Assembly: GCA_024704765.1 (NCBI GenBank)
Contig: JAKMXF010000300.1
Span: forward strand, 457,019-521,018
Direction: 5' to 3'
Length of the DNA stretch: 64,000 bases
Source: Oopsacas minuta
Taxonomy: Eukaryota > Animalia > Porifera
The notes under the pieces are model-generated. The model was given only the letters and a program-made list of their open reading frames with translations. It did not search any database and had not been told where the DNA came from. Position 1 is the first letter of the stretch. The number at the start of each line of letters is the position of its first letter. Positions 42,885 through 57,559 of the stretch are shown one piece after another. The translations under genes and the position numbers were made by a program.

Positions 42885-45800
42885 TTACACATAAGTAGGA
42901 TCAGCTCCGCTCCTGAGCATCAGATCAGTAGACCGGATATATCTTGTGTAACAATGAGGACACATAGTCTTTATTGTAAAGAATTTATCGCTTCTACACA
43001 CACTACACTTTTCTGGTACCAGGTGAGTGCCATCTATTGGGATTCTGGGTACCACACCCTCTGATGTACCTTCGTTAACTGAGGATAATTTGAAATAGTC
43101 ACGGGAAGGTGGTGTCGTATCCTTCGGTCCATCAATCGCTGGAGAGTTGATGTTATTATTGAGAGATATACTTCTAGAGTATATCTTAGAGTCTAGGAGT
43201 TTTCTGGACAATTCAGAATGATCCATTGCTGGTGGAATATTGTCTCTCCTGTGTCTAATGAACTGATCTAATATTGTATAATGATCTTCGTTAAAGAATG
43301 GCCGTGTGGGAGTCAAGTCCCGGTCCCTTCTATGCTCGTGCTTACGACTCCTGCTGGAAGCTCGAGAGCTAGAAGATGACGTAAAATCATCAGATATAGT
43401 GGAGAATGTAGAGGGAGTTGAGGGAGGAGATTCGGGAATACTCGGCGGTTCTGTTACCGGGAGAGCTTGTTGTTGTTGTTGTTGTTTCCTCGAGGGAGGA
43501 TAATCTACTCTGTGTGGAGGCTTCATATTCTCTTTGTCTTCCTCTCTCATAGCTCTCCCGATCGGAGGTGGGCGTGGAATGCTCTGGTAGAGAGAGGGGG
43601 TGAGGGGAGGGGGTCTAAGGATTGGTCGTACATATATGGGAAGAGGTGCCTGCTCCTCAGGGGGAGGACTGTTCTCCTGATTATCCTCTAGCGATGAGTC
43701 AAATTTGACTCTCTTACTCTTTGCATTGGACTGTTTCTTAACAGGAGACTTGAACTGATGGTTAGGATCGAGTGTCTTAAGCACACTCCTTCTATGAAGT
43801 CTTACCGCTTGGTGATGGCAAATATGTCTCAACTGTGAATAGGCTTGTTTCTTAACAGGATCAAGTCTAACGTCAGGCTCTATCAGAGCTAAATCCAGTT
43901 TGTTTTGTGCCTGCACACAAAGACTGAACGCTACACTGAAATCTGAAATGTTTAGAGACTCTCTATAAAGATCACGAGCCTGTGTGTAGAACATATCAGC
44001 TTTAGTTGGTGGGAATGAAGCAGGATATGCTGGGATTTCAATAGTGGGTCCGTTAGTGAGAGAAGGTGGAGATATATATTGTGGTACATCAGCCATTCCT
44101 TGAGGAGAATTGTTCTCAAGATTAAGATCGTTAAACTCTGAAATATTCTGGCATTGTTTGTTACTCAAACTTTCCAATTCTCTCTTCTGTCTTTGTTCCT
44201 GTTCTTCCATCTTCTCTTGGTAGTCTCTGACAAGTAAGGCTTCCTCCTCGCTGTGTTTTCGCTGTAACATATCTCTCTCTTCTACAATCATTTCATCGCT
44301 TCCTACATCCTCTACTGTTTCTGATGAAGTAGAATCCTCAATGGGAATAGTAGCTGTCTCTGTTGACAATTCAACACGGATAGAATTGATATCAGGATTA
44401 TAGTCTTCATCCTCACTAGAGCTCTCGTCTGGTGTGTTCTGTGAGCTGCTGAGTGAGCTAACAGAGAGATTATCAGCCGAGTAACTACGGACATCCATTA
44501 GTAAGTCTATTCCTTCTTGGAAGTTAGTTTGTGTAAAAGCTTGTAATAATACCTCTATAGGGATTTGATAGTTATGAATCCTCTCTAGCACAGCTCTTCC
44601 CGGACTGAAATTAGTTTGTTTTTGTCGCTGTTGAAAAGCTTTAATTTCATAGCTCTCTCCAATGCAAGGAATACTTTGATAGAGATTTGCCCATTGACCA
44701 GTCTCTGTAAGCTTATCACTCAGCTTAGTGGCAGCTTGAGAGGAGAGAGCCTTCCCGGAGTGAGGAAAGGGATTGAAAGAGAACTTTGGGAAAGATGTGC
44801 TGATGCTTGGGACTTCATTTTGAGGCGGAACATTATGTATAGGGAGAGGGTATTGAAGACACGGTTGTGGAGTGATGGATGGGAATATAAACGGTGGATA
44901 TGCCAGGTTAACTGGAGGTGTCATTAGTGAATGAGGGTCCTGTGTTGCTGGGAAGGATGATCCATCTGGATAAGATGGTACAGCTTGAAACTGATAAGGA
45001 TGATTAGGATTAATAGAGGGAGGTAGAGCTGATAAGTTAGAGGGCTGTGGTGGTATAACGAATTGTTGGGAAGGTAAGAAGGGAGCAGAAGCATTGAGAT
45101 TTGGCGGAGTTGTTAGCTTTCCAACTCCCTGTTTGTTCCTTTCATAATCTTCCAAAAGATTTTGAAATCCAATTCCAATAGGAATAGAAGGATAGAGAGA
45201 CGATTTGTTTAGAGTAGATTCTTCTTCGACTTTTTGCATTCTGCTAATTGTAGCACTTTCTCCAGCTGCTTCAGGCGTTCGTACTATCTGCTGGGGGAGG
45301 TCTTGAGGAGAGGGTCTAAAGGCGGATGGATTAATGTAGAGACAGGAGAGAAGAGTTATTCGCTTGTTTATTAAATAAGATGTCAGATTAGCAAACGTTG
45401 TGAACTAAAAAGAAATCAAATATGTAATATATTGTATGCATATAAGTAAGTCAACATCGAAATAAGACAAATTGACACACTTAGACTTGAATAAATCCAA
45501 AATTGAGGGTTATACGTACGTATTACGTTTATGTAATACTTTTTCATTGAATAACGTATTAAACGAATTATACTATTTTAGCAAATGTCAATCTGTTCAC
45601 AACTAAAATGCATACAAGTCAGTGTATCCCGACACTATAATGTGAATACTGTTTTATATGACTAGACTGTTAATTATGGATAAATGAAGGGAAACATCTG
45701 ACACAGAACTCTTTCAAATGCGAATGGAATAAAAAGAAGCAGTATTAACTATGAGATAACATGTTGTGCCCGTCTACGTATATTATTAACTAATTATAGT

Positions 45801-48800
45801 AGTACTTACTTGTATAGCTTTTTGTCCATCATATCCAATCCATAGCTTTAGTTCTGTATGGAAGCTGAATGTTGAATGACCTCCTAATCCATCTGACGTA
45901 AGGACAGAAGAGAGATAGAAATGTGTTGTATAACAATTGTTTCTCTTCTTCGTTATTACCAAGTCTGATAAATTTATATAGTTCCCCAGAAAACAAGCAT
46001 GTTGTAGTTCAGATTCTGCTCTGAAATCTAAGATAAGAACATTAGGAGAAGATAGTAGCTGCTGTCTGAATTGGAGCGTAAGGGAGAGAGCTTTACTGAA
46101 GAGAAGAGGATGATCTTCTCGACCGAATTTCTTAGTTATTGCAAGTTTCATAATATTTTCACACAGCAAAGGCATAGAGACAGGAAGTACAGTCAAACTA
46201 CCTTGATCATGTTTTAAGATAAAGTTATTCATCAATCGATAGTTTCCCAATTTAAGAGTGTTATCAATTAGCTTAACCATATCGGGTAACATTTCGCCAA
46301 TAGACTGGTACTTGTCTGTGGAAACGAAGCCGTGCTTTTTCGCGAGATATATAGCATCTGATGAGAGTGCATAAGACCGCGAGTAATAATATAAAGCGAA
46401 TAGACTCTTGAGTGCACAGAGAACACAACTAAATCCCACACAAGTATGTCCTGGTGCTAGTAATACGGAGTGTCGGAAGAATGGAATATGCCAGAGCATT
46501 GTTACTGCAGAACTAAACAAGTGAAATGACTGCTCTAGCTCGTTAGCAGATAGTTGTGCCGTAGGAATATCTAGCTGGAAGTCCGTATCGTTAGTAGAGG
46601 TCTGTTCTGGTGTAAGTATGTAAATGGTAGGAGATGGAGACCTGTCGGGAGGGGGAGGAAATGTTAGGAGCGGAGAATCCTCTCTGCCATGAGCAATAAT
46701 ACTCTGAAAAGAAGGTTGGTAAATCTCTGGAGGAGGATTCATGTTTGTTAGACTAGTCGTAGGTGCTAATTCATCGTTAAGGAATTCAAAGAAATTATCT
46801 TCTGGCTGTGTGAAGCTGAAGTCTATCAGATGTGAGGTGGGGGAGGTAATGAACGGAACCTCCTCCTGGTTGTCATGCTGCTGTCCTATGGAATGTGAAG
46901 CTACAGAGGAAAGAGTAGCAGGATGGGAATGTGCTGTCACTGACAGAGTAGGTACATATTCAGAGTATTGACCCATTATGTTAGAATTAGAATAGAAACA
47001 AAATACAGGAGACAATGGAGAAGAATGGAAAGATTCACAGAGCTCTGCCCAAGTAAATTCCTGTCCTTCAGAGAGTGAATTAATCTCAAGAAGTAGCCAA
47101 CGATTCCTTGGAGCAAGAAATACAGCAGAAGTATAAGTGTTATCTTTCGTTTTGAGAATTATACCAGTTAGATAGTAGCTAACATGATGGACGTAGCATT
47201 TGGGATTAACAGTACCCAGATAGCCTAGCCTCAGTAGAGAGGGGAGAAATGATATAGTATCTCCGTTTGAGTTATCTTCTCCCACATATAGCGACAGGAG
47301 ATTGGTAGCATTCTGAATCTGCTTCTTACCTATGCTAGAGGCTGGTTTGAGAGCAATCTTACACTTCTTTGGATTGAGTTTAGAGAATTGAGGGATATGA
47401 GCTACTTGAGACATGTAACCAGGGAGAGATAATATCACGGAAGCAATCGCTTCCTCTCCACTGCGGTCAACAACTGACAAATACAATTTGCTTCTCAGTG
47501 CAGGATTCCGCTGCACTAGTTTAGACAGCAGCTCCTGGTATATGTCGAGTGGACTATCCCCTCCTACGTCACTCAAGTTCTGCTCTGCGAATATTATGAC
47601 AGAGTGCTGTCTAGACGAGAAAGTGCGGAAAGTAGTCAGGATAAGATTCCGCAGCTCTCTTATCGCAGGGCAAGAGTCATTGGATAGTGATTGGACTGAT
47701 GCAGTGAATCCTTGGTTCAGTAGCAGAGTACTGAGTAGCTGTACTGGTAGGTTACGTGATATGTCAGTGGTAGAGACGGAGGGATGAGGAGTTAGAGTGT
47801 GATACCTAACCTTGTGCAGAGAAGATGATTGAGAGTGAGAAGATTCAGAATTAGCATATTGAGGCTTATTGTAACGAGGTAAGGAAGTTTGTGTGGAATG
47901 AGAGATAGTTGTAGCTAGCTCTTGTGGTAAAGAGAATATAGGTCGAGACTGAGGTGAAGTGTAAAGTAAAGCGATTGGGAATATTGAGTGGCGAGTGACA
48001 TATGAAATCAATTCTTGCCAGTGAATCAAATTGTTATCGTTGTGTGCATTAGGATCAAAAGAGTACCAGAGTCTTCTATTCTCTGAGTAGGAATATGAAA
48101 TGAGAGATCCAGAGTCAGATCGAGCGATTATGCCGGTCAAATAGAACGGTTTATGTTTGGAATGCTTTCTATCAAGAGAGGAACAGAGGTCTCCCAATCT
48201 CAATAGGGTCGGTATACAATTCCAAAGTCTAAAAGCCAAATCTAAATCTACTTCAATATCGTAATTAACTGCTACATAGAACTGGTCTGGAGAATTAATG
48301 ATCTTTCCAAATGAATCCTGGAATAAGTTCTTAAGACAAGCTCGCATAACCTTGTGATTGTATGTAACAGGTATTTTCTGGTTGAGAGATTTTTCCATTG
48401 CTACGAGCCATTCACTAATCTTTGTTCCTACAAAATAAACATCTTCCACATTTGCAGACTTGTTATTAGCTCGGATTTGCAAAGAGTAATGATCCTTGAA
48501 TGCTTCGCTGTATGGTTGGAAGCTCCAGTGCAGTTGGTGGAACAACCGGTGTCCGGTATCAAAGTCAGAGCTGCCCAACATAGAGGGCATACATGTGTCG
48601 AGGTATTCAATGATGTCTGCTTTGATAATTTCGTTAGCAGAAGCTGCACGTTTGAACAAGACGCTCAGAGCTTGGATTATCTGGTGCTTTTTAATTGGCA
48701 GTCGTGAAAAATTTAGGACCGACTGTGAGTAGGAAGGAAAGTTAATCATTTGTAGCAAGATGTGTACTGCAATGCTTGACTCAAACGGATCTCCATGGGG

Positions 48801-51800
48801 ATGGAGTTCTCTCGGACGAAGTACAGGAGTTGAATTAGATTGTAAATTCAAACGCGGTCGAGGCTGAGGCTCATCTTCTAGCTTGGGAGGTGAATGCTTG
48901 AGCTCAAGCTCCTGTATAACACTCTCAAACAGACCGAGATTCTTACCTTCTTGTGACTGGTTGGAAACAAACGGTGGTTCTGGTTTTCGGGGCTGACTAG
49001 AATAAACTATCTGTTCATAAACAGGAGAATTAGAAAATAACTCATTCAGATGATCAGTATAACTCCCTTCTCTGTAAGTAGCTAGTCTGCTTGGTTTTGG
49101 AGTTTCTAATATCTCACTGAGACGAGGAGAGGAAGGCGGGTATTCTCTGGTTGTCTGTTCCACGCGAGGCAAACGAATCTTATCTTTTTTCTTAAAATAT
49201 GTCTTAGGATTCAATTTGTTAAGAAGAGTTACAGAATTTCCTTTCTTATTTTTGTTCTTAACTTTAGCTCCGTCGATATGCGTCCTAGGTATATCTGATT
49301 TAGAAGTTGCGGACTGCACTGGCTGCACATGAGACTTAGTTGTGACTGCAGACAGATCAGACACGCTAGAGAAATCACTCGATTCGAAAGCAGGTCTGGG
49401 TCCTGACTTCATTGAGACATCTGTACTCTCTTTGGAGGGAGGTTGTCTATATGGGAGAGGAGGTTTCGTACCTCTACTCACCGTCTCTGAGGAGGAGTCT
49501 GACTGCTGAACCTGGTATCTATTTGTTGGAGAGGTTATCTTGTCTGGCAGACTCAAAGATTGGTTTGCTCTTCTCTTCTTGTTTAGGTTAATGTCTTCAA
49601 TCGTTACGTATTGCGGTAAATTAGTGTTCTCGTTAGTGTCTGCACTTCTAGTACCGTTTGGATAGAGATGAGGGTTAGAGGGTTGATCTGGAGCACTCAT
49701 TGTGCGGATAACCTCACTGACTGGGAATACAAGAGCTGGGTCTTTATAGTGGTGAGTAATGTCAAGAGGATTTGTGTATACTAGAGAGATAGGGATAGCA
49801 TCCAGACCTTTAAGCTCCTCAACTACATGAGGCCAAGCTCCCACCTCTTTATATCCCATTCCGTCTACAGATACCCACGTCTCTACTGTACTATGATAGT
49901 AAATATGCACCACTCTATCTCTGCTTATTTCAGCCATAACGCCAGTTAGATAGAGGAGGCTACAGGCTCTAGCGTTAGGTCCGATGTCCTTAAAGAGTCT
50001 GTCAATACGAAGAGAAGTAGGAATGGAAGCTAGAAGCATATTTTTATCAGTCAAAGCTACTTCGTAGTCCAAAGCTAAGCACAAAATTCTTGGCGCTGTC
50101 ACCAGAAGAGAGTTAGACAAGTAAGTTCTGTTACAAGATTGACTCTTACAATCACGTTTGTTCATAAGAACAAGAGTATCACGAATTGCTTTGTGTGCGA
50201 GTTTACCTGGCACGTTATTAATGTTACCGTACTTATTACAAGCTTTGCTAGCGTGTGGCAGATATAACTTTATATTAAGGTGTAATAGGTTACGTTGTAT
50301 TTCTATAGGCTCATACGTAGCACCACATCTACACTTTCCGGATTCTTGTAGTGTAATTGTAAAAATGTTTTGTATAAGACGGCTTTTACCAATAGGATCA
50401 TGTCCCTGGAAGTTTATTGAATTCCTCAATTCATCCTTCATAAGTGTCAAAATAGTATCAAATACTTCTGTGCCACTTCCTATGAGTTGAGAGTTCTTGA
50501 GTAATCGGGAAGTTAAGGTCTATTGGGATAATATATCAAATAAGTTATTGTGTATTAATTATATTAATAGTAACTAACCTGGAATAGAGGAAGCATTGGT
50601 GTGAGTTCATTAGAGTGATTACAAGCAGCAAATACTTCTTTAATTCGGATGATTAAAGGAAGGAAATCAGGCGTTTTCAATATCATTTCCTGGTGAAGGA
50701 GAGTCTCTCTGAACAGATCAATACTCCACAGGACGACAAGAGAAGTAAAGAATGGATGATAGCTAGCTCTAGTCTCTATCCTGAACGGACTGGTACTGCT
50801 ACAGGGACGTGATGAAGCAGGGATTAACTTTCTGAATCCACCATTCTCCTCACAATTATCAACACGTCTTTGCAGAGAGCTCTCATAGTTTGAACTTAAG
50901 CTGATAATGTCCAGCTTGTCTAAGCTACCCAGATTAACCAACTTACTGAGATTATCTATACTGGCTGAATTAGGGAGTACTATCTTGATAGGACTACCAG
51001 CAACACACTGCAGCTCTACTTCCTTCACTGTGTCTTGTACCAAGCTCTTTTGAGAAGACGGAGACTTAGGATTTTCAAGTTGATTGCGATCTAATAACTC
51101 CTTCAAAATTGGCACTGCGATTTCATTCAAATGATTGTTACACTTGGTATGTGAAATCTCTGGTAGTCCTCTTTGAAGATCAGTCGCATCCAACAGATTA
51201 GCAGCAGGATTAGTATAGATTAGAAGATCTGGACGACAGTGGTTAGACTGCAGAAAATACAGAACATCTTGCCAGATATATCCGATCACCTGGAAATTCG
51301 CTCCGTCGTAAAATATCCAAGATTTGATATCATTCGTGTAGAACAGGATTAGTTGAATTTGGTTGATGGACACAATCATACCATAGAGATAGTAAATGCG
51401 ATTTGAAACGGTGCGGTTAGCAACAACAGGGAACAGATGTTTAAACAAGAGGGTGGGAGAAATGTGCTCTATCAAATACTCGGTCTCAGTGGAGTTTATT
51501 ACGTCTGGATTCCATTGCATTTGTATAGGAATTATGTCGGGGGAGTTAAGGAGTGTAACATTGGTATTGTCACAAGTGAGAGCTTGACGAATAAGACTGG
51601 AGAAGAGCTTGTCGAAGGACAGAGGAGATCGAGCATTCTCTAGACTCGATTTCAGAAGGACTACCATTCTGTTAGCAGAGATAGGAAGAGAGATTTGTGT
51701 GTAAATTGTTCTAGCCTCATGTTGGAGTTGAATCATCATGCTGTTACGTAGATAGTTAGAAAATGGATTCATTGGGTAGCTGGAGAGAACATGGGACAAA

Positions 51801-54800
51801 AATGAAATGTAAAGATCTGTAGAAGTCTGTCCATTTAGGTTAAAAAGGAAACCAAAGTGGTGACAAGCTATTGGAATAAACTTAGAAGATATTAAATGAG
51901 GAGCGAATATGATGACATGGAAAAGCTGTTTCAATGCAAGGTATGGAGTATTTTCTAGGATGTCATCATGAATCTGTAAGAGAGATAATCTGAATAAGTT
52001 AATCTGGAGAAGAGAAAATACGACAACTGACAGACGTTCTGCGTAATCCATTATGTCTGTAATTGGAGGAGAGTCTTGAGTATTGACTAGCTCGGCTGTT
52101 TCCTACACATAACAAAATATAAAGTGTTTACTGTGGATACAAATAATATATATTTTGTCAATCGTCACTTGAGTAACAAAACTAAGATACACATTTTTCA
52201 TAGGAATAATTAAGTAATCAATTCTCCTGATGTACAGATTAATTACCACACATAAATTAGTAGGACAAGCGCATAATGGCCATTTAACTGTACAACAATG
52301 TTATGAGATGAATAATGAATAGTAAGTATAAGATTTCATTTACCTCCATGCAGATAAGAAATATTCAATTCAGCTCAATAAGGTAATAGGAATTAAGGAA
52401 TCTCTTAAAGTTCTTGTGAATTTGTGTATAATTGAATTGATTGAGGAAATTTAAAATAGTTTACATTGTGACTATAGTCAAATAGAAATGTCCCTAAAAG
52501 ATAAGTCTAGTCTTCTCTGTATCGTAACAGGAGGTAGTAAGGGGTTTGGAAGAGCGATTAGCTTGGAAGTATGCAAAGAGTGGGGTGTAAACCGCCGAAT
52601 ACAAAAGATCGTTTTGGTACTGGTGGCACGGGACAAGATGACATTAGAAAATACGGCAGCTGAATGCAAGTCTATCTATAATGACGTCACCCTTTACTTG
52701 CTCAGTCATGACTTGAGTGATCACGATTCAATATTAACTCTCATAGAAGAGCTTAACGCCTTATTTTGCCATGGCAAAGAGCAGTTTACTGAAGTGATGC
52801 TATTTGCTAATGCTGGAAGAGTTGGAGATGTTTCAAAGCCGATTTCATCTCATTTTGATCCCAAAATATTACAGAAATACTTTAACCTAATGCTCACTTC
52901 AAATATTCTAATATCTTCATGGTTCACTTCAGAGTTGAAATCTGTAAAAAAGACTATAATCTTCGTATCTTCCTTGTTAGCTATACAGCCTTATGCTGGT
53001 TTCTCCTTGTATTCTGCGGGTAAGGCAGGGGGACATATGCTTTTCAGATGCATGGCAGAAGAGAACCCAGAAGTTAGAGTGCTGGTGTATAGTCCTGGCC
53101 CATTGCAAACTGATATGACGGATGACGTACTAAAGAATATGTGTTTCAAGAAGACACAAGAAAGGTTCACTCAAATGAAATTCCTGAAACCAGAATTTTC
53201 CGTCTCAATACTATTCGGTATACTCAAAGATGATAAATACAAATCAGGAGAGTATATTGATATTTATGACATCATCAAACAAGAATAACTATTCGATATC
53301 TTATTAGATTAGACAGATAATATAGTAGATTCGTCGCATATTAAACTATTACATTACCTAAAATATTGTTGTCGAATAAAGTGGTTATTGTAATTAAATG
53401 ATGTATTTTAACATACCTCAAAGCTGATAGGGCTAAATATGCTGGTGCTAAATGGATGGTCACTAAGTGAAGATAGTAGCGGTGAATGGCTAGAAGCTTG
53501 AACATCGTTATCACTAATCACAGATAAAATTTCGGAATCTAGAGTTCCGCTCCGTTCGAGAGAGCTAGACTTGACAGAGACGACAGGATTCCTGTGAACA
53601 GAAACGGGGGATGGAGTGAGATTCATTTCTTCGTATTTAATTGTAGCGTCTAAAAAGCTAAGCGCTTCATCAACTCCTTGCTGAACAGAGAAAGGAGAGA
53701 CTCTATTTCGCTCGCTAGAAATAACCACAAAGTCTTCGTGAAATAGAGGTTTGCTTGGAGTAAGTGTATTGTATTGGGAAGGATGTTTGGGAGCTGTAGC
53801 TAGGGGGCTAGTGCTCTCCTGTGAGTGAGGATTCACAGATGGATTAGAATATAGTAGGAATATTGGAGCATAAGTATTTGTCGAAGCCTTACAAGAGTGC
53901 CAAACGAGAGAGAGCTGTGGCCCTAACTGACTCACTGCTAAGGTTCTACCACTGAAATGTGTCCAAGAACGGTACTTCTGATGGTAAAACCAAGTCTCAC
54001 TGGAAGAGGGGCCTTGAGTTACAATCCCGACGAGATAGTACATCCGTTTAGCTATGTACTTATTATGTGTATGATGGAATAGGTCTGCTGGCTGAATAGC
54101 AGTACTTATGAGTTCGTAGAACTCAGTCACTTCATCTCTACTTGGTTCTCCATCCCAGGTCAAAGATAAACAAATAATTTCTGGATCGTTAAGAAGAGAG
54201 AAGGTCCTTTTATTGTTACCGACTGACTGCTCGAGAAGAGAGCGTGTTGCTTGAGTAAATAGTTGCATTACTCTGATAGAGCCTGCTGCAGTGGATGTTT
54301 CTTTGTTAAGACTTCTAATACTTCGGATCAATTCAGGGGCTGAAAGCTCGAGCAAGAAGAGATCATTATTTTCAGAGTTTCTTCCTCTCTCTGAAATTTC
54401 TAAACGTAGAGACAGTTTCTGGTGAGCAATACAGAGAGAACTACAACACATCTCTGAGATGTTATAGTCACCTGTAAAATAATTTTCTGTACACAAACAG
54501 TTATGCAGTCGAGTAAGCACATCTTGGAAGAAGGATTGTGGTCCTTGTCCCATTCGTTGTAACAGAGACTTATGAGAGAGGATTGTGTTCAATGCTTCGG
54601 GAGTCAGGTTTGGATCTGTGGAGTATTGAACGGTTTTCAGAGCACAAACAATACAAGATTCTCCCTCACACTGGTGTTTTGTTATTCCAGTTATAATATT
54701 TCTAAACACATCCAACTGCCAGAGAAGAAGCAAGGCTGGTGGAGTAGTTAAGTTATCTTCAGTAGCAGGTATGTCGGAGGTGGGAGAGATCAAGTCAATC

Positions 54801-57559
54801 AAAGCTCTCTTCTCTCCATCAGCTCCTTCAACTATTCTAAAAGTACCAAGCTCTTCGTGAATAACCAGACTGGAGTCAAGCTCATTGTCTGAATCTTGGC
54901 CTGCAGAATGTAACTTGTCAAATAAAATCTTACCAGAATTGGTAGCTGGATAAGAAATTCTCTCGCCAGCCCTCCACTGAAACAACTCAGCATCACTACT
55001 GTACATTGACTCTGGGCTTCCGTGAACATTATTACATGAAGAAACACTGTCTGGAGTCCGAGGGAATAGAAATTCCCTTCCAATCTTTTCACCTTCCGCT
55101 CCAGGCGACAGAACACTCTCAGTCAGTGCGGAATCTGTTTGTAGCTGAGAAAAGAGAGGGTCAATATACACCAGTAAGATAGCTTGGTATGGGATGGAAT
55201 GAAGCGCATTATTCACACTACCCCACTTGTCTCCTAATGTGGTTATCTTAGCATCATCTAAGCAGTACCATGCATGGAGAGTGGAGTGGTTAAAAAAGAA
55301 AGCATATTTTGGATCGTTTCTAGCTACAATGGCTGTCAAGTAAAAGGGACGGAACTTCAGGAACGGCTGAGTATGGTCAAATATATCGTCTAAGTAGAGG
55401 GATGTCCCGATTGAGTTGATTACGTCATGCAGGCATTGAGAGGTAATGGGGAGTCCGTCCCAATTGAGAGAAATGGTAAACACATCAGGCTTGTTGGTAA
55501 GAGTGCGTTGAATTCTTAACGGAGCTTTACAATTGGGATTAGGACAAGGCTGAGTGTCTTGCAGAGATCCGATAAGCTTCAGGATAGTTTCAAACTCTCT
55601 TGAATTAGACCGACTAGATTTGGAAGAGTTTGAAATCTTTCTTGATTCTTCAATCAAAGATTGTGCAGAAATAGAGTAGACTAACTCAAGGGAGTGAGAC
55701 AGTTCCAAACTATGTCCACACTGACAATTTCCATGGAGAATGAAATTGGATGAAAACTTCTGATGAGTCAAACAATGTGGAGCGCTGCATGACGTCACTT
55801 CTCCACTGCCTGTCAGGTTGTAATGAATTCTAACTAGCAACTCTTCGTACGTCTTATGAATCCCATCGAAAGATAGACCGAGATTATAACCTTCCTGCTT
55901 TTCGAAACAAATAGCCATGACCCGTCGCAATAGCTCCGGAGGAACGACCGGAATATCTTTGTAGTCAAATCTATCCAGAATAAGTTGGTACACACAGAAC
56001 ACGCACGTTTTGAGTGTACATACGTGGCCTTGCACTCGCTGGAGAGATTTCCTGAAAACTTCCAGCTCCCAGAGAAGGGCAAATGGGGTAGGGATTGAGG
56101 GTACATGTTTCTGACAAGTTTTGCGCTTGCTTGGTGCCCTTAATGGGGCAGGGTTTGGAGACAAGCTAAGAGAATCAGAACATGATGACATCACTTCCCC
56201 TTCGTTAGGATAAATTGTACGTTTCTCTGTGTAAGGCGAATGTACATATACTTTAGTCGGTTGAAAATTTTCGTGTTGATCCTTGAAGCTTCCATCTGAT
56301 CGCAGGATTGAAGGGGAGCTATTATTTAAATTAATTATTCCGGCGTGAGGCTCGCTAGCAGCCAAGCCAAAATCTAAGTAGCCGTAAGAGTGAGTGTCGT
56401 CTGTTAGGGCTGTGTGATTCTGTAGAGAGTCAGTTATGTGCTGCAGATAGCTAGAATTGCCTTCCTTCCAGTGAGATGTATTCTGCTCCTCGTCCCTCCA
56501 AGCATTCGACAAATGAGATCTAGACTCCTCAGAAGAACTAGACAGCTGGGGCTGTGAAAGTACAAGCACCGAACTACGGGGAAGTATATAATCTGGATCA
56601 GAATACAGCAGGAGGATAGGAAGATAGAGATTTTGTTTCATATAAAAGAGTAGCTGAGGAAAGGTTCCGTCTGCTAGCTTTACAGATTCTAGATCTATCC
56701 TGACCCAGCTAAGGTTAGCGGAGTGGAAAGTGAATAAAACCTCACTGCTCTCAAATAAGCAAAGCATAGCAGTAAGTTCATATCGTTTCTTATCTCCATA
56801 CTGCTGTGAAGATGTTAAGAGATCCTCCAAAGATAAACTGGTTGCTAATGAATTAAGCAAGGTGTCCAGTTTATCACTGACATCAACTTCCCCTCTATCC
56901 CACGCTATCTCAAATGCAAGTAGAGGAGGGGAGTTAATCAGTTGTAGAGAAGGTTTGATTAATCTAGAGCAATTAGTATTATTAGGACAAGATAGTGTAA
57001 GAAGAGAAAGGTTCAATTCTCGTAGGATACGTGTGAAGTATCGGGGATCAATCTGCGTATTTAGCCTCTCAGTTTGCCTCATAGCATTGGCCTGCAAGTA
57101 GAACATTTCTACACTAATGGATAAGAAGTACTTAAGCACAGAATTAGTCTTAGCCTTATAGCCGCACTCGCAAGCTAAAACTTCATCGATCTCTACTCCG
57201 AATAGCTCTTGTCCTAGAGGAGTAGACAGACACGTGTTTAAGGAACTAAGAAGAGAAGAGAGTGCGAGAGATGCAGAATCGAAAGAGACAGCAGAATCTG
57301 ATTGGAGAATAGTCGCAGCTCTCTGTACTATGTTAGGTGGTAGACCTGGGTATTTGTGATGCTGAAAATTGGGAAATATTGATTTTAGTGCACAAAAAAA
57401 ACATGATGTGTATTTACAGTTAGAATGGTGCTTGACAGTCCTAAATCTCTTTCGGAAGGCGTCTGTCTCCCAGAGCAGCTGTATGATAGAGGTGAGAAAA
57501 AGCGCACGAGGGGGATCAGATGAACGTGTATCAGTTTCGGATACATAAGATGTATCCAT
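42885..57559 (-). CDS. Giant USP53/USP54 (echinus)-like protein, ~4,298 aa, eight tandem USP-fold pseudo-DUB domains plus death-like, MIT-like and Cys4 C-terminal modules; exons 57559-53417, 52102-50579, 50519-45810, 45404-42885
   Basis: The four ORFs are joined by three phase-0 GT-AG introns, each checked in frame without stops. Each domain follows the USP53/54 pattern (QLLW.L..FR..H.C....C..CAL ... L.GII ... F..H....W..D ... LLY.NP). Introns 2 and 3 fall inside domains 5 and 8, and splicing completes those domains. Confidence 0.82.
52488..53288 (+). CDS. SPR: Sepiapterin reductase (SDR family), intronless, nested antisense in intron 1 of the giant USP-like gene
   Basis: IVTGGSKGFGR, ANAGRVGDVS, VSSLLAIQP, YSAGK, VLVYSPGPLQTDM. 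Confidence 0.9.
   Translation: MSLKDKSSLLCIVTGGSKGFGRAISLEVCKEWGVNRRIQKIVLVLVARDKMTLENTAAECKSIYNDVTLYLLSHDLSDHDSILTLIEELNALFCHGKEQFTEVMLFANAGRVGDVSKPISSHFDPKILQKYFNLMLTSNILISSWFTSELKSVKKTIIFVSSLLAIQPYAGFSLYSAGKAGGHMLFRCMAEENPEVRVLVYSPGPLQTDMTDDVLKNMCFKKTQERFTQMKFLKPEFSVSILFGILKDDKYKSGEYIDIYDIIKQE

What the first reader, a model, noticed from the sequence alone, without database searches (positions are those of the whole stretch)
45320..57559. Eight tandem USP53/54-type pseudo-deubiquitinase domains in one ~4,300-aa protein
Four ORFs join through three phase-0 introns (53416-52103, 50578-50520, 45809-45405) into a 12,897-nt CDS. Approximate domain spans: 57510-56600, 56100-55160, 54745-53840, 52040-51205, 50770-49770, 48775-47950, 47750-46985, 46530-45320. 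None keeps the catalytic Cys of the SCFLNSAVQVLW box (e.g. ALFLTSIIQLLW, HLFSSAVTMLW); only domain 8 shows a His-box-like GGHS. The copies are highly diverged, and exon boundaries do not match domain boundaries, implying old intra-exonic duplications. Known USP53, USP54 and echinus proteins have one USP domain, and the human ones were recently reported to act on K63 chains. Inference: an array of inactive USP folds could act as a multivalent or chain-length-sensing polyubiquitin scaffold. I know of no described protein with this architecture.
Basis: partly seen in the sequence, partly recalled or inferred. Interest (0 to 1): 0.9.

Follow-up and report, generated by a model that had tools for sequence, protein, structure and literature searches.

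The report
Eight dead USP domains in one protein
A sponge gene related to the human deubiquitinases USP53 and USP54 has multiplied its enzyme domain into eight tandem copies that have all lost their catalytic residues yet are kept by selection in six species, so it is a giant non-enzymatic relative whose job is still unknown.

Summary
Four minus-strand ORFs (42885-57559) join through three GT..AG, phase-0 introns into a 12,897-nt CDS of 4,298 aa. One run that behaves as RNA shows intron 2 spliced (long flanks) and intron 1 spliced (27-nt flank only). Intron 3 rests on conservation and on domain 8 continuing across it.

A profile built only from non-sponge USP53/54 proteins recognises seven of the eight domains. 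Domain 7 is linked only through domain 6 and a confident but partly circular AlphaFold model.

None of 48 domain copies (8 domains, 6 species) has both the catalytic Cys and His. By contrast, 94 of 110 single-domain relatives keep Cys/His/Asp. Every domain has dN/dS of 0.04-0.2.

The protein also shares a central helical block and a terminal Cys4 knuckle with USP54 proteins. I therefore read it as the clade's USP53/54 counterpart with an amplified, inactivated USP domain.

The polyubiquitin-scaffold idea is untested and somewhat weakened. The S2 hydrophobic residue is not kept, and five domains lack the finger zinc ribbon.

Among the 150 best of 1,567 profile hits, only an uncharacterised three-domain poplar model resembles it. 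An earlier scan note, unverified, names the genome as the glass sponge Oopsacas minuta.

Verdict: a new variant of a known kind, of moderate interest.

The parts
53417..57559 (-). Exon 1 (aa 1-1381): start codon, domains D1-D3 and their linkers
   Evidence: ORF, translation, Pfam UCH hit. Orthologues are collinear at 52-70% identity.
52103..53416 (-). Intron 1 (1,314 nt, phase 0), which holds a nested plus-strand gene
   Evidence: GT..AG ends. An X4 contig joins 52101/53416, but with only a 27-nt side. A donor and a phase-0 acceptor are kept in L003-L007.
50579..52102 (-). Exon 2 (aa 1382-1889): D4 and the first 65 aa of D5
50520..50578 (-). Intron 2 (59 nt, phase 0), inside D5
   Evidence: GT..AG ends. 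An X4 contig skips exactly these 59 nt with long flanks. The external profile aligns through the joint, aa 1837-2141.
45810..50519 (-). Exon 3 (aa 1890-3459): rest of D5, then D6, D7 and most of D8
   Evidence: Orthologues are 48-73% identical.
45405..45809 (-). Intron 3 (405 nt, phase 0), inside D8
   Evidence: GT..AG ends. Position and phase are kept in five orthologues. Not checked with reads.
42885..45404 (-).
56585..57532 (-). D1 (aa 10-325): thumb zinc site and four-Cys finger ribbon kept; Cys and His lost
   Evidence: 135 bits to the external profile. The only domain that passes Pfam UCH on its own, 39.6 bits. Residue table.
55145..56122 (-). D2 (aa 480-805): the most USP54-like copy; all three zinc sites and the Asp kept; Cys is Pro and His is Lys
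   Evidence: E 3e-47 to the USP54 catalytic domain 8c61. 231 bits..
53825..54772 (-). D3 (aa 930-1245): thumb zinc site kept, fingers shortened
   Evidence: 129 bits.. Split by an extra intron in L004-L007.
51191..52063 (-). D4 (aa 1395-1685): no zinc ligands left
   Evidence: 65 bits, C-terminal half only. hhalign 97.7% to USP54 references.
49692..50773 (-). D5 (aa 1825-2165, interrupted by intron 2): four-Cys finger ribbon kept
   Evidence: 77 bits over the full length..
47862..48809 (-). D6 (aa 2460-2775)
   Evidence: 27 bits. hhalign 95% to USP54 references. Sister of D7 in the tree, support 98.
46962..47774 (-). D7 (aa 2805-3075): the most diverged copy
   Evidence: 1.5 bits to the external profile. 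hhalign 96.2% to D6. AlphaFold model pLDDT 87, best PDB match USP54 8c61 at TM 0.72.
45297..46544 (-). D8 (aa 3215-3495, interrupted by intron 3): thumb zinc site kept
   Evidence: 47 + 5 bits. hhalign 98.7% to USP54 references..
43776..44003 (-). Conserved helical block (aa 3927-4002) shared with the middle of USP54-family proteins
   Evidence: Up to 87% invariant across six species. hhalign 93.7%, E 2e-7, to a profile built without any sponge sequence.
42951..43007 (-). Terminal CxxC-x11-CxxC knuckle (aa 4259-4277)
   Evidence: Conserved in six species. The same motif lies in the last 50 aa of 54 of 84 long USP53/54-like proteins, against 0.04% of other 50-aa windows.
42888..42896 (-). C-terminal T-x-V/L tail (TYV), which looks like a class I PDZ ligand
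   Evidence: TDV, TDV, TEL, TDL, TDL and TYV in the six species. Binding is inferred, not tested.

Best explanation
This is the USP53/54-family gene of a sponge clade, in which the single USP domain was amplified to eight tandem copies before the six sampled species diverged. An earlier scan note, which I could not verify, names the genome as the glass sponge Oopsacas minuta.

Shown here:
- One spliced 4,298-aa reading frame.
- Eight homologous USP-type domains.
- Loss of the Cys/His pair in every copy.
- Strong purifying selection on each copy.
- USP54-type non-catalytic modules at the C-terminal end.

Inferred:
- The protein does not cleave ubiquitin and works as a very large pseudo-deubiquitinase scaffold.
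- The domains serve as folded binding modules that have diverged into at least three structural grades. D2 is near-complete with three zinc sites. D1 and D5 keep the finger ribbon. D3 and D8 keep only the thumb zinc. D4, D6 and D7 keep none.
- The shared C-terminal modules and the T-x-V/L tail place the array where USP53/54 proteins normally act.
- Ubiquitin binding, if any survives, is most likely in D2 and perhaps D1 and D5.
For: Gene model.

Homology of the eight domains: pairwise phmmer, profile-profile comparison, an external USP53/54 profile against shuffled controls, and D2 against PDB 8c61 at E 3e-47.

Catalytic loss: no Cys plus His in 48 copies, against 94 of 110 relatives with C/H/D.

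Selection: dN/dS is 0.04-0.2 for each domain in pairs with dS of 0.5-0.9. Domains are more conserved than linkers. Zinc ligands are invariant within given domains across six species.

Age and origin: each domain is monophyletic across species, and all outgroups fall on one side of a branch with support 96.

Family assignment: the central helical block and the terminal Cys4 knuckle are shared with the USP54 family. Named best hits are USP54 of fish, Hydra and Trichoplax.

Precedent: scaffold roles of pseudo-deubiquitinases are reviewed in PMC10919355.
Against: No binding or activity data exist. The intron 1 joint rests on a contig with only 27 nt on one side, and intron 3 was not checked with reads. 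A D1-D3 product plus a D4-D8 product from the Met at 52051 could therefore coexist with the full-length form.

D7 is not recognised by the external profile on its own. Its model used an alignment that contains USP54 rows. An orthologue-only model of D6-D7 failed (pLDDT 40).

Non-canonical catalysis has been claimed for USP39 and USP52 (PMC10919355), so 'dead' is an inference from residues. Whether the genome holds a second, active USP53/54 gene is unknown, so 'orthologue' could be 'paralogue'.
Confidence: 0.6

Rival explanations
1. A multivalent polyubiquitin reader. Several or all dead USP domains would still bind ubiquitin, so the array would bind long K63 chains with high avidity or measure chain length, like a natural tandem ubiquitin-binding entity.
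For: Human USP53/54 domains carry S1 and S2 ubiquitin sites and prefer longer K63 chains (PMC12037411). D2 is 30-35% identical to USP54 over the whole domain with all zinc sites kept. All copies are under selection.
Against: The F161-equivalent S2 residue is polar, charged or variable (D1 D/A/H/Y, D2 I/N/T, D3 E/G/R, D4 and D5 Q, D6 R/E), although about 85% of outgroups have a hydrophobic residue there. Five domains have shortened fingers without the zinc ribbon. The DDAxE-type motif is degenerate in most domains. The fingers are the least reliably aligned region, so this is not decisive.
Confidence: 0.2
2. Two main products rather than one. A D1-D3 protein would end just inside the unspliced intron 1 (read-through gives EVC then stop). 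A D4-D8 plus C-terminus protein would start at the ATG at 52051. The eight-domain form would be minor.
For: Exon 2 has an in-frame ATG right at the start of D4. Intron 1 is long, lies in a linker and holds another gene. The spliced contig has only 27 nt on one side, and an unspliced contig exists at about a tenth of the depth.
Against: The joint sits exactly at the predicted GT..AG and skips 1,314 nt. The intronic stretch 52173-52339 has depth 26, against 270-480 in the flanking exons. All five orthologues keep a donor, a phase-0 acceptor and an open frame upstream of the Met.
Confidence: 0.1
3. Cryptic catalysis. One or more domains would still hydrolyse ubiquitin or a ubiquitin-like protein through non-canonical residues.
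For: Such claims exist for USP39 and USP52 (PMC10919355). USP53/54 themselves were wrongly labelled inactive (PMC12037411). D1 of one relative (L004) has a Cys at the catalytic position.
Against: USP53/54 activity required the canonical Cys and His. Here both are replaced in every copy, by residues that differ between domains and, in several, between species. The Asp is kept only in D2.
Confidence: 0.05

Closest known systems
USP54 and USP53 (human; Drosophila echinus): K63-directed USP deubiquitinases
   Same: D2 matches the USP54 catalytic domain at E 3e-47 and no other USP in the PDB. The best named hits are USP54. The thumb and finger zinc sites, a central helical block and a terminal Cys4 knuckle are shared.
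   Different: Eight USP domains instead of one. The catalytic Cys and His are lost in all, and the S2-site hydrophobic residue is not kept. About 4,300 aa instead of 1,000-2,000. A T-x-V/L tail that only 3 of 95 long relatives show.
USP-family pseudo-deubiquitinases: PAN2/USP52 and USP39/Sad1
   Same: A USP fold without the catalytic Cys/His that is kept as a structural or scaffold module (PMC10919355). PAN2 pseudo-USP structures are among the structural matches of the D7 model.
   Different: Those proteins have one pseudo-USP domain, joined to another functional module or sitting in a defined complex. Here eight copies lie in tandem, and no partner is known.
Coronavirus nsp3 with two papain-like protease domains (PL1pro, PL2pro) of USP-like fold (from my own knowledge, not tested here)
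   Same: More than one USP-fold domain in a single polypeptide.
   Different: Two copies, catalytically active, viral, and not of the USP53/54 lineage.
Populus nigra XP_061947507.1, an uncharacterised predicted protein
   Same: Three tandem domains scoring 84, 197 and 221 bits against the USP53/54 profile within one predicted protein.
   Different: An automated gene model that may fuse tandem genes. A search for the Cys-box motif found it once, in the last copy (NSCFLNA); the other copies were not examined further. It is a plant lineage, with no sign of common origin with the sponge array.
Engineered tandem ubiquitin-binding entities (TUBEs; Hjerpe et al. 2009, as cited in PMC12037411)
   Different: TUBEs use small UBA domains with proven binding. 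Binding by these USP copies is unproven, and the sequence is partly against it.

Membership tests
USP (peptidase C19) fold | Significant match of each domain to a USP profile | tested here: met
   Seven of eight domains score 27-231 bits against a profile of 110 non-sponge USP53/54 domains, with shuffles at 5.1 or less. D7 is linked only through D6 (hhalign 96.2%). With Pfam UCH, only D1 passes the gathering score on its own.
USP (peptidase C19) fold | Thumb-palm-fingers three-dimensional structure | tested here: inconclusive
   The D7 model has pLDDT 87 and pTM 0.88. Its best PDB matches are all USP domains, with USP54 8c61 first at TM 0.72. However, the input alignment held USP54 rows. The orthologue-only D6-D7 model failed (pLDDT 40). 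The other domains were not modelled.
Active USP deubiquitinase | Catalytic Cys, His and Asp/Asn triad | tested here: not met
   No copy among 8 domains in 6 species has both Cys and His. His is absent at the aligned position in all 48 copies. Cys appears only in L004 D1. Asp is kept only in D2. Among relatives, 94 of 110 keep C/H/D.
USP53/54 subfamily | Closest sequence relatives are USP53/54 rather than other USPs | tested here: met
   Searching exon 1 (D1-D3) against the PDB returned only USP54 among USP structures at E up to 1, matched by D2. Named top hits are USP54 of fish, Hydra and Trichoplax. No tree including other USP families was built.
USP53/54 subfamily | Shared non-catalytic modules: a central helical block and a terminal CxxC...CxxC knuckle | tested here: met
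   hhalign gives 93.7%, E 2e-7, for the helical block against a profile built without sponge rows. The knuckle lies in the last 50 aa of 54 of 84 relatives and of all six sponge proteins. As a short motif, its HMM E-values alone are not significant.
USP53/54 subfamily | Hydrophobic S2-site residue on the back of the fingers (USP54 F161, USP53 Y160) | tested here: not met
   The aligned column is polar, charged or variable in D1-D6 and small or mixed in D7 and D8. It is V/I/F/Y/L/C in about 85% of 110 relatives. The finger region is the least secure part of the alignment.
USP53/54 subfamily | K63-linkage-directed cleavage activity | not testable with these tools
   This needs enzyme assays. The missing Cys and His predict no activity (PMC12037411 shows that both are required).
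Pseudo-deubiquitinase (pseudoenzyme kept by selection) | Catalytic residues lost while the fold-bearing sequence stays under purifying selection | tested here: met
   dN/dS is 0.04-0.2 for every domain. Zinc ligands are invariant across species. Domains are more conserved than linkers.
Tandem ubiquitin-binding array | Demonstrated ubiquitin binding by the repeated modules | not testable with these tools
   No complex prediction or binding assay was available. The indirect sequence signs are mixed to negative.

The most novel reading that the evidence does not exclude
The array is a natural polyubiquitin ruler or sink. Several dead USP domains would still grip ubiquitin, so one 480-kDa protein would bind or protect long chains at PDZ-organised sites in the syncytial tissue of glass sponges. 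That would be a reader built from eraser domains, with no counterpart in other animals.
Probability: 0.15. Interest if true: 0.8.

Novelty: new variant of a known kind. Interest (0 to 1): 0.55.

Why it matters
USP53 and USP54 moved from 'inactive' to K63-specific enzymes only in 2024, and USP53 mutations cause cholestasis. Here the same family has gone the opposite way in one animal clade. The enzyme domain was copied eight times, every copy lost catalysis, and all were kept for a long time.

This gives a graded natural series of USP folds, from near-complete to stripped of all zinc sites. Such a series can show what a USP fold can do without chemistry, and which surfaces matter.

It also shows that standard annotation misses such arrays, because only one of the eight domains passes Pfam's threshold on its own.

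Tried and rejected
- Orthologue-only structure. An AlphaFold model of the D6-D7 pair from six orthologues alone gave pLDDT 40 and was unusable. There is therefore no fold evidence independent of USP54 rows, and nothing on how the domains pack.
- Pfam on single domains. Only D1 passes. This reflects a weak general model, not evidence against homology.
- Whole C-terminal exon. Neither it nor the linkers found anything among 150 USP53/54-like proteins by phmmer or a whole-exon HMM. Only the focused helical block and the Cys4 motif gave a signal.
- Second active gene. Looking for a second, active USP53/54 gene in this genome through the scan's notes found only transposon-borne USP-like domains. 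The question stays open.
- P0101/P0175. This 701-aa single-domain active-looking relative comes from assemblies of the same series, but a different sample. I could not tell whether it is from a glass sponge.
- Literature. Searches for tandem USP domains returned only universal stress proteins. USP54 together with sponge terms gave nothing relevant.
- Decay. Pseudogene decay is rejected by the open frame in six species and by dN/dS.
- GGHS in D8. A remnant His box is rejected, because orthologues have GKT, DSC, GDQ, GEH and GEQ there.

Full report
**Gene model**

The minus strand between 42885 and 57559 carries four long ORFs. All are phase 0. Joining the ORFs gives a 12,897-nt reading frame of 4,298 codons with no internal stop.

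**Transcript evidence**

Of four public runs that hold this DNA, three behave as genomic DNA: they show even depth and Nextera adaptor ends. One, X4, behaves as RNA. It has TruSeq adaptor ends, and depth falls from about 430 to 26 in the gene-free part of intron 1.

In X4, one contig skips exactly 50520-50578 with long flanks on both sides. Another joins 52101 to 53416, skipping 1,314 nt, but with only 27 nt on the exon-2 side. That is below the tool's own 31-nt bridging rule, yet the joint falls exactly on the predicted splice sites.

Three observations support it:
- D8's last strand lies immediately downstream of it.
- Five orthologous loci keep GT..AG at the same position and phase.
- The same five loci also keep a donor, a phase-0 acceptor and an open frame across intron 1.

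**Are there eight USP domains?**

Pairwise phmmer links all eight segments. Profile-profile comparison of six-species alignments gives:
- 97-100% probability, over the full length, between D1, D2, D3, D5 and D8 and two USP54 reference sequences.
- 95-98% for the C-terminal halves of D4 and D6.
- 96% between D7 and D6.

A profile built only from 110 non-sponge USP53/54-like domains scores the spliced protein as follows:

| Domain | Bits |
|---|---|
| D1 | 135 |
| D2 | 231 |
| D3 | 129 |
| D4 | 65 |
| D5 | 77 |
| D6 | 27 |
| D7 | 1.5 |
| D8 | 47 + 5 |

The best of 1,600 shuffled domains scores 5.1 bits. The D5 match runs through the exon 2/3 joint.

D2 matches the crystallised human USP54 catalytic domain at E 3e-47. 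No other USP structure appears at E up to 1.

D7 is the weak point. An AlphaFold model built with a 73-row alignment is confident (pLDDT 87, pTM 0.88). Its best structural matches are USP54 (TM 0.72) followed by other USP domains and the PAN2 pseudo-USP. That alignment contains USP54 rows, however, and a control model from six orthologues alone failed.

Standard annotation would miss the array, because only D1 passes Pfam UCH on its own.

**Catalytic residues**

I aligned all copies to fish and spider USP54-like proteins. The Cys-box Cys is replaced as follows:

| Domain | Residue(s) at the catalytic Cys position |
|---|---|
| D1 | L, P or R (one relative, L004, has C) |
| D2 | P |
| D3 | varied |
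| D4 | E |
| D5 | H |
| D6 | S |
| D7 | N |
| D8 | H or P (gapped in half the copies) |

The His is absent from all 48 copies, and the Asp survives only in D2. In contrast, 94 of 110 single-domain relatives keep Cys/His/Asp, and 109 keep His.

**Conservation**

Six species' loci (the window and L003-L007), plus two partial loci (L002, L008), carry the same gene in the same neighbourhood. An RRM gene lies upstream, and CCDC28 and an ALG-type glycosyltransferase lie downstream. All eight domains are present and collinear in the five complete orthologous loci, L003-L007.

For species pairs with unsaturated dS (0.5-0.9), dN/dS is 0.06-0.20 for every domain. The window-L004 pair gives 0.04-0.16. 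Domains are generally more conserved than linkers.

Zinc ligands are invariant within specific domains across all six species:
- The thumb H-C-C-C site in D1, D2, D3 and D8.
- The four-Cys finger ribbon in D1, D2 and D5.
- The second thumb site only in D2.
- No zinc ligands in D4, D6 or D7.

**Origin**

In a maximum-likelihood tree, each domain forms its own clade across species (support 99-100). D6 and D7 are sisters (98). All 28 outgroup USP53/54-like domains fall on one side of a branch (96). The duplications therefore predate the split of the sampled species. They are consistent with a single lineage-specific amplification, though the tree is unrooted and the stems are long.

The introns do not mark domain borders. 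An extra intron inside D3 is present in L004-L007 but absent from the window and L003.

**Is it the USP53/54 gene?**

Beyond the USP domains, a block at aa 3927-4002, up to 87% invariant among the six species, aligns to a conserved central region of USP54-family proteins. That region was defined without sponge sequences, and the match is hhalign 93.7%, E 2e-7.

The last 45 residues hold a CxxC-x11-CxxC knuckle. The same motif sits in the last 50 residues of 54 of 84 long relatives, against 0.04% of other 50-aa windows.

The order of modules is therefore that of USP54, with the catalytic domain multiplied. A T-x-V/L C-terminus is conserved in all six species but is rare in relatives, at 3 of 95.

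**How unusual is it?**

A profile of all copies was scored against 1.84 billion representative proteins and found 1,567 hits. Among the best 150, only ORFs of this clade have two to four full domains. The single exception is an uncharacterised Populus nigra model with three tandem USP53/54-like domains. Single-domain relatives with an intact Cys box and His box occur in Hydra, Trichoplax, a leech, an ichthyosporean and an amoebozoan.

Literature searches found no description of tandem ubiquitin-specific protease domains, nor of USP54 in sponges.

**Function**

USP53 and USP54 need their Cys and His for activity. They read K63 chains through an S2 site centred on F161/Y160 on the back of the fingers (PMC12037411).

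In the sponge copies that position is polar, charged or variable. Five domains have shortened fingers without the zinc ribbon, and the cleft motif is degenerate.

My reading is a non-catalytic scaffold of folded USP-derived modules. Residual ubiquitin binding is most plausible in D2, and less so in D1 and D5. The rest would be repurposed, as with other pseudo-deubiquitinases (PMC10919355).

**Organism**

I could not verify this. The compact layout, short introns, long single exons, nested genes and strong microsynteny fit what is published for glass sponge genomes (PMC10282587).

**Open points**

- Whether a second, active USP53/54 gene exists in this genome.
- RNA proof of intron 3, and of the full-length isoform.
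- Any binding or localisation data.

Noticed in passing
window 52488-53288 (+): A 266-aa short-chain dehydrogenase gene (Pfam adh_short, 87 bits) lies on the opposite strand inside intron 1 of the giant gene. It has depth of about 240 in the RNA-like run. Homologous adh_short ORFs sit in the same intron in L002, L004, L006 and L007, sometimes alongside NHL-repeat ORFs.
   Followed up: partly
L004 6056-6129, and the same site in L005-L007; window about 54470: An extra short GT..AG intron splits D3 in four relatives. It is absent from the window and from L003. The window reads ACAG|GTGAC at the homologous spot, which is consistent with intron loss or a proto-splice site.
   Followed up: partly
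P0076, P0166, P0169 (Populus nigra XP_061947507.1; Populus x canadensis KAL9380986.1): Predicted poplar proteins carry three tandem USP53/54-like domains (84, 197 and 221 bits). A Cys-box motif search found one match, in the last copy. This may be a real array or a fused model of tandem genes.
   Followed up: partly
L004 3010-3963 (D1): One relative has a Cys at the catalytic position of D1 (PPTCFLTS), where the others have L, P or R. Its His box is still missing.
   Followed up: yes
window 42885-44730 (-): The C-terminal exon holds Pro/Ser-rich stretches, an acidic coiled region and a poly-Q run, besides the conserved helical block, the Cys4 knuckle and the T-x-V/L tail. Another note of this scan (s1-209504) proposes death-like and MIT-like folds, which I did not test.
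   Followed up: partly
window 53413, 49647, 50283, 50819: Single-base differences between the assembly and three or four runs of the same sample. 53413 is the fourth base of the intron 1 donor (GTATGT versus GTAAGT), and both variants are good donors.
   Followed up: no
P0031 (2,171 aa), residues 1110-1185 and 1185-1477: A USP53/54-like protein of unknown origin has a duplicated first 75 residues of its USP domain, which sits unusually far from the N-terminus.
   Followed up: no
L011 6001-8106 (P0175/P0101, 701 aa): An intron-less, single-domain USP53/54-like gene with Cys and His boxes in place (NNCFLN, GRHY). It lies on a high-coverage contig from an assembly of the same series as the sponge loci, next to reverse-transcriptase ORFs. 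The host organism is unknown.
   Followed up: partly
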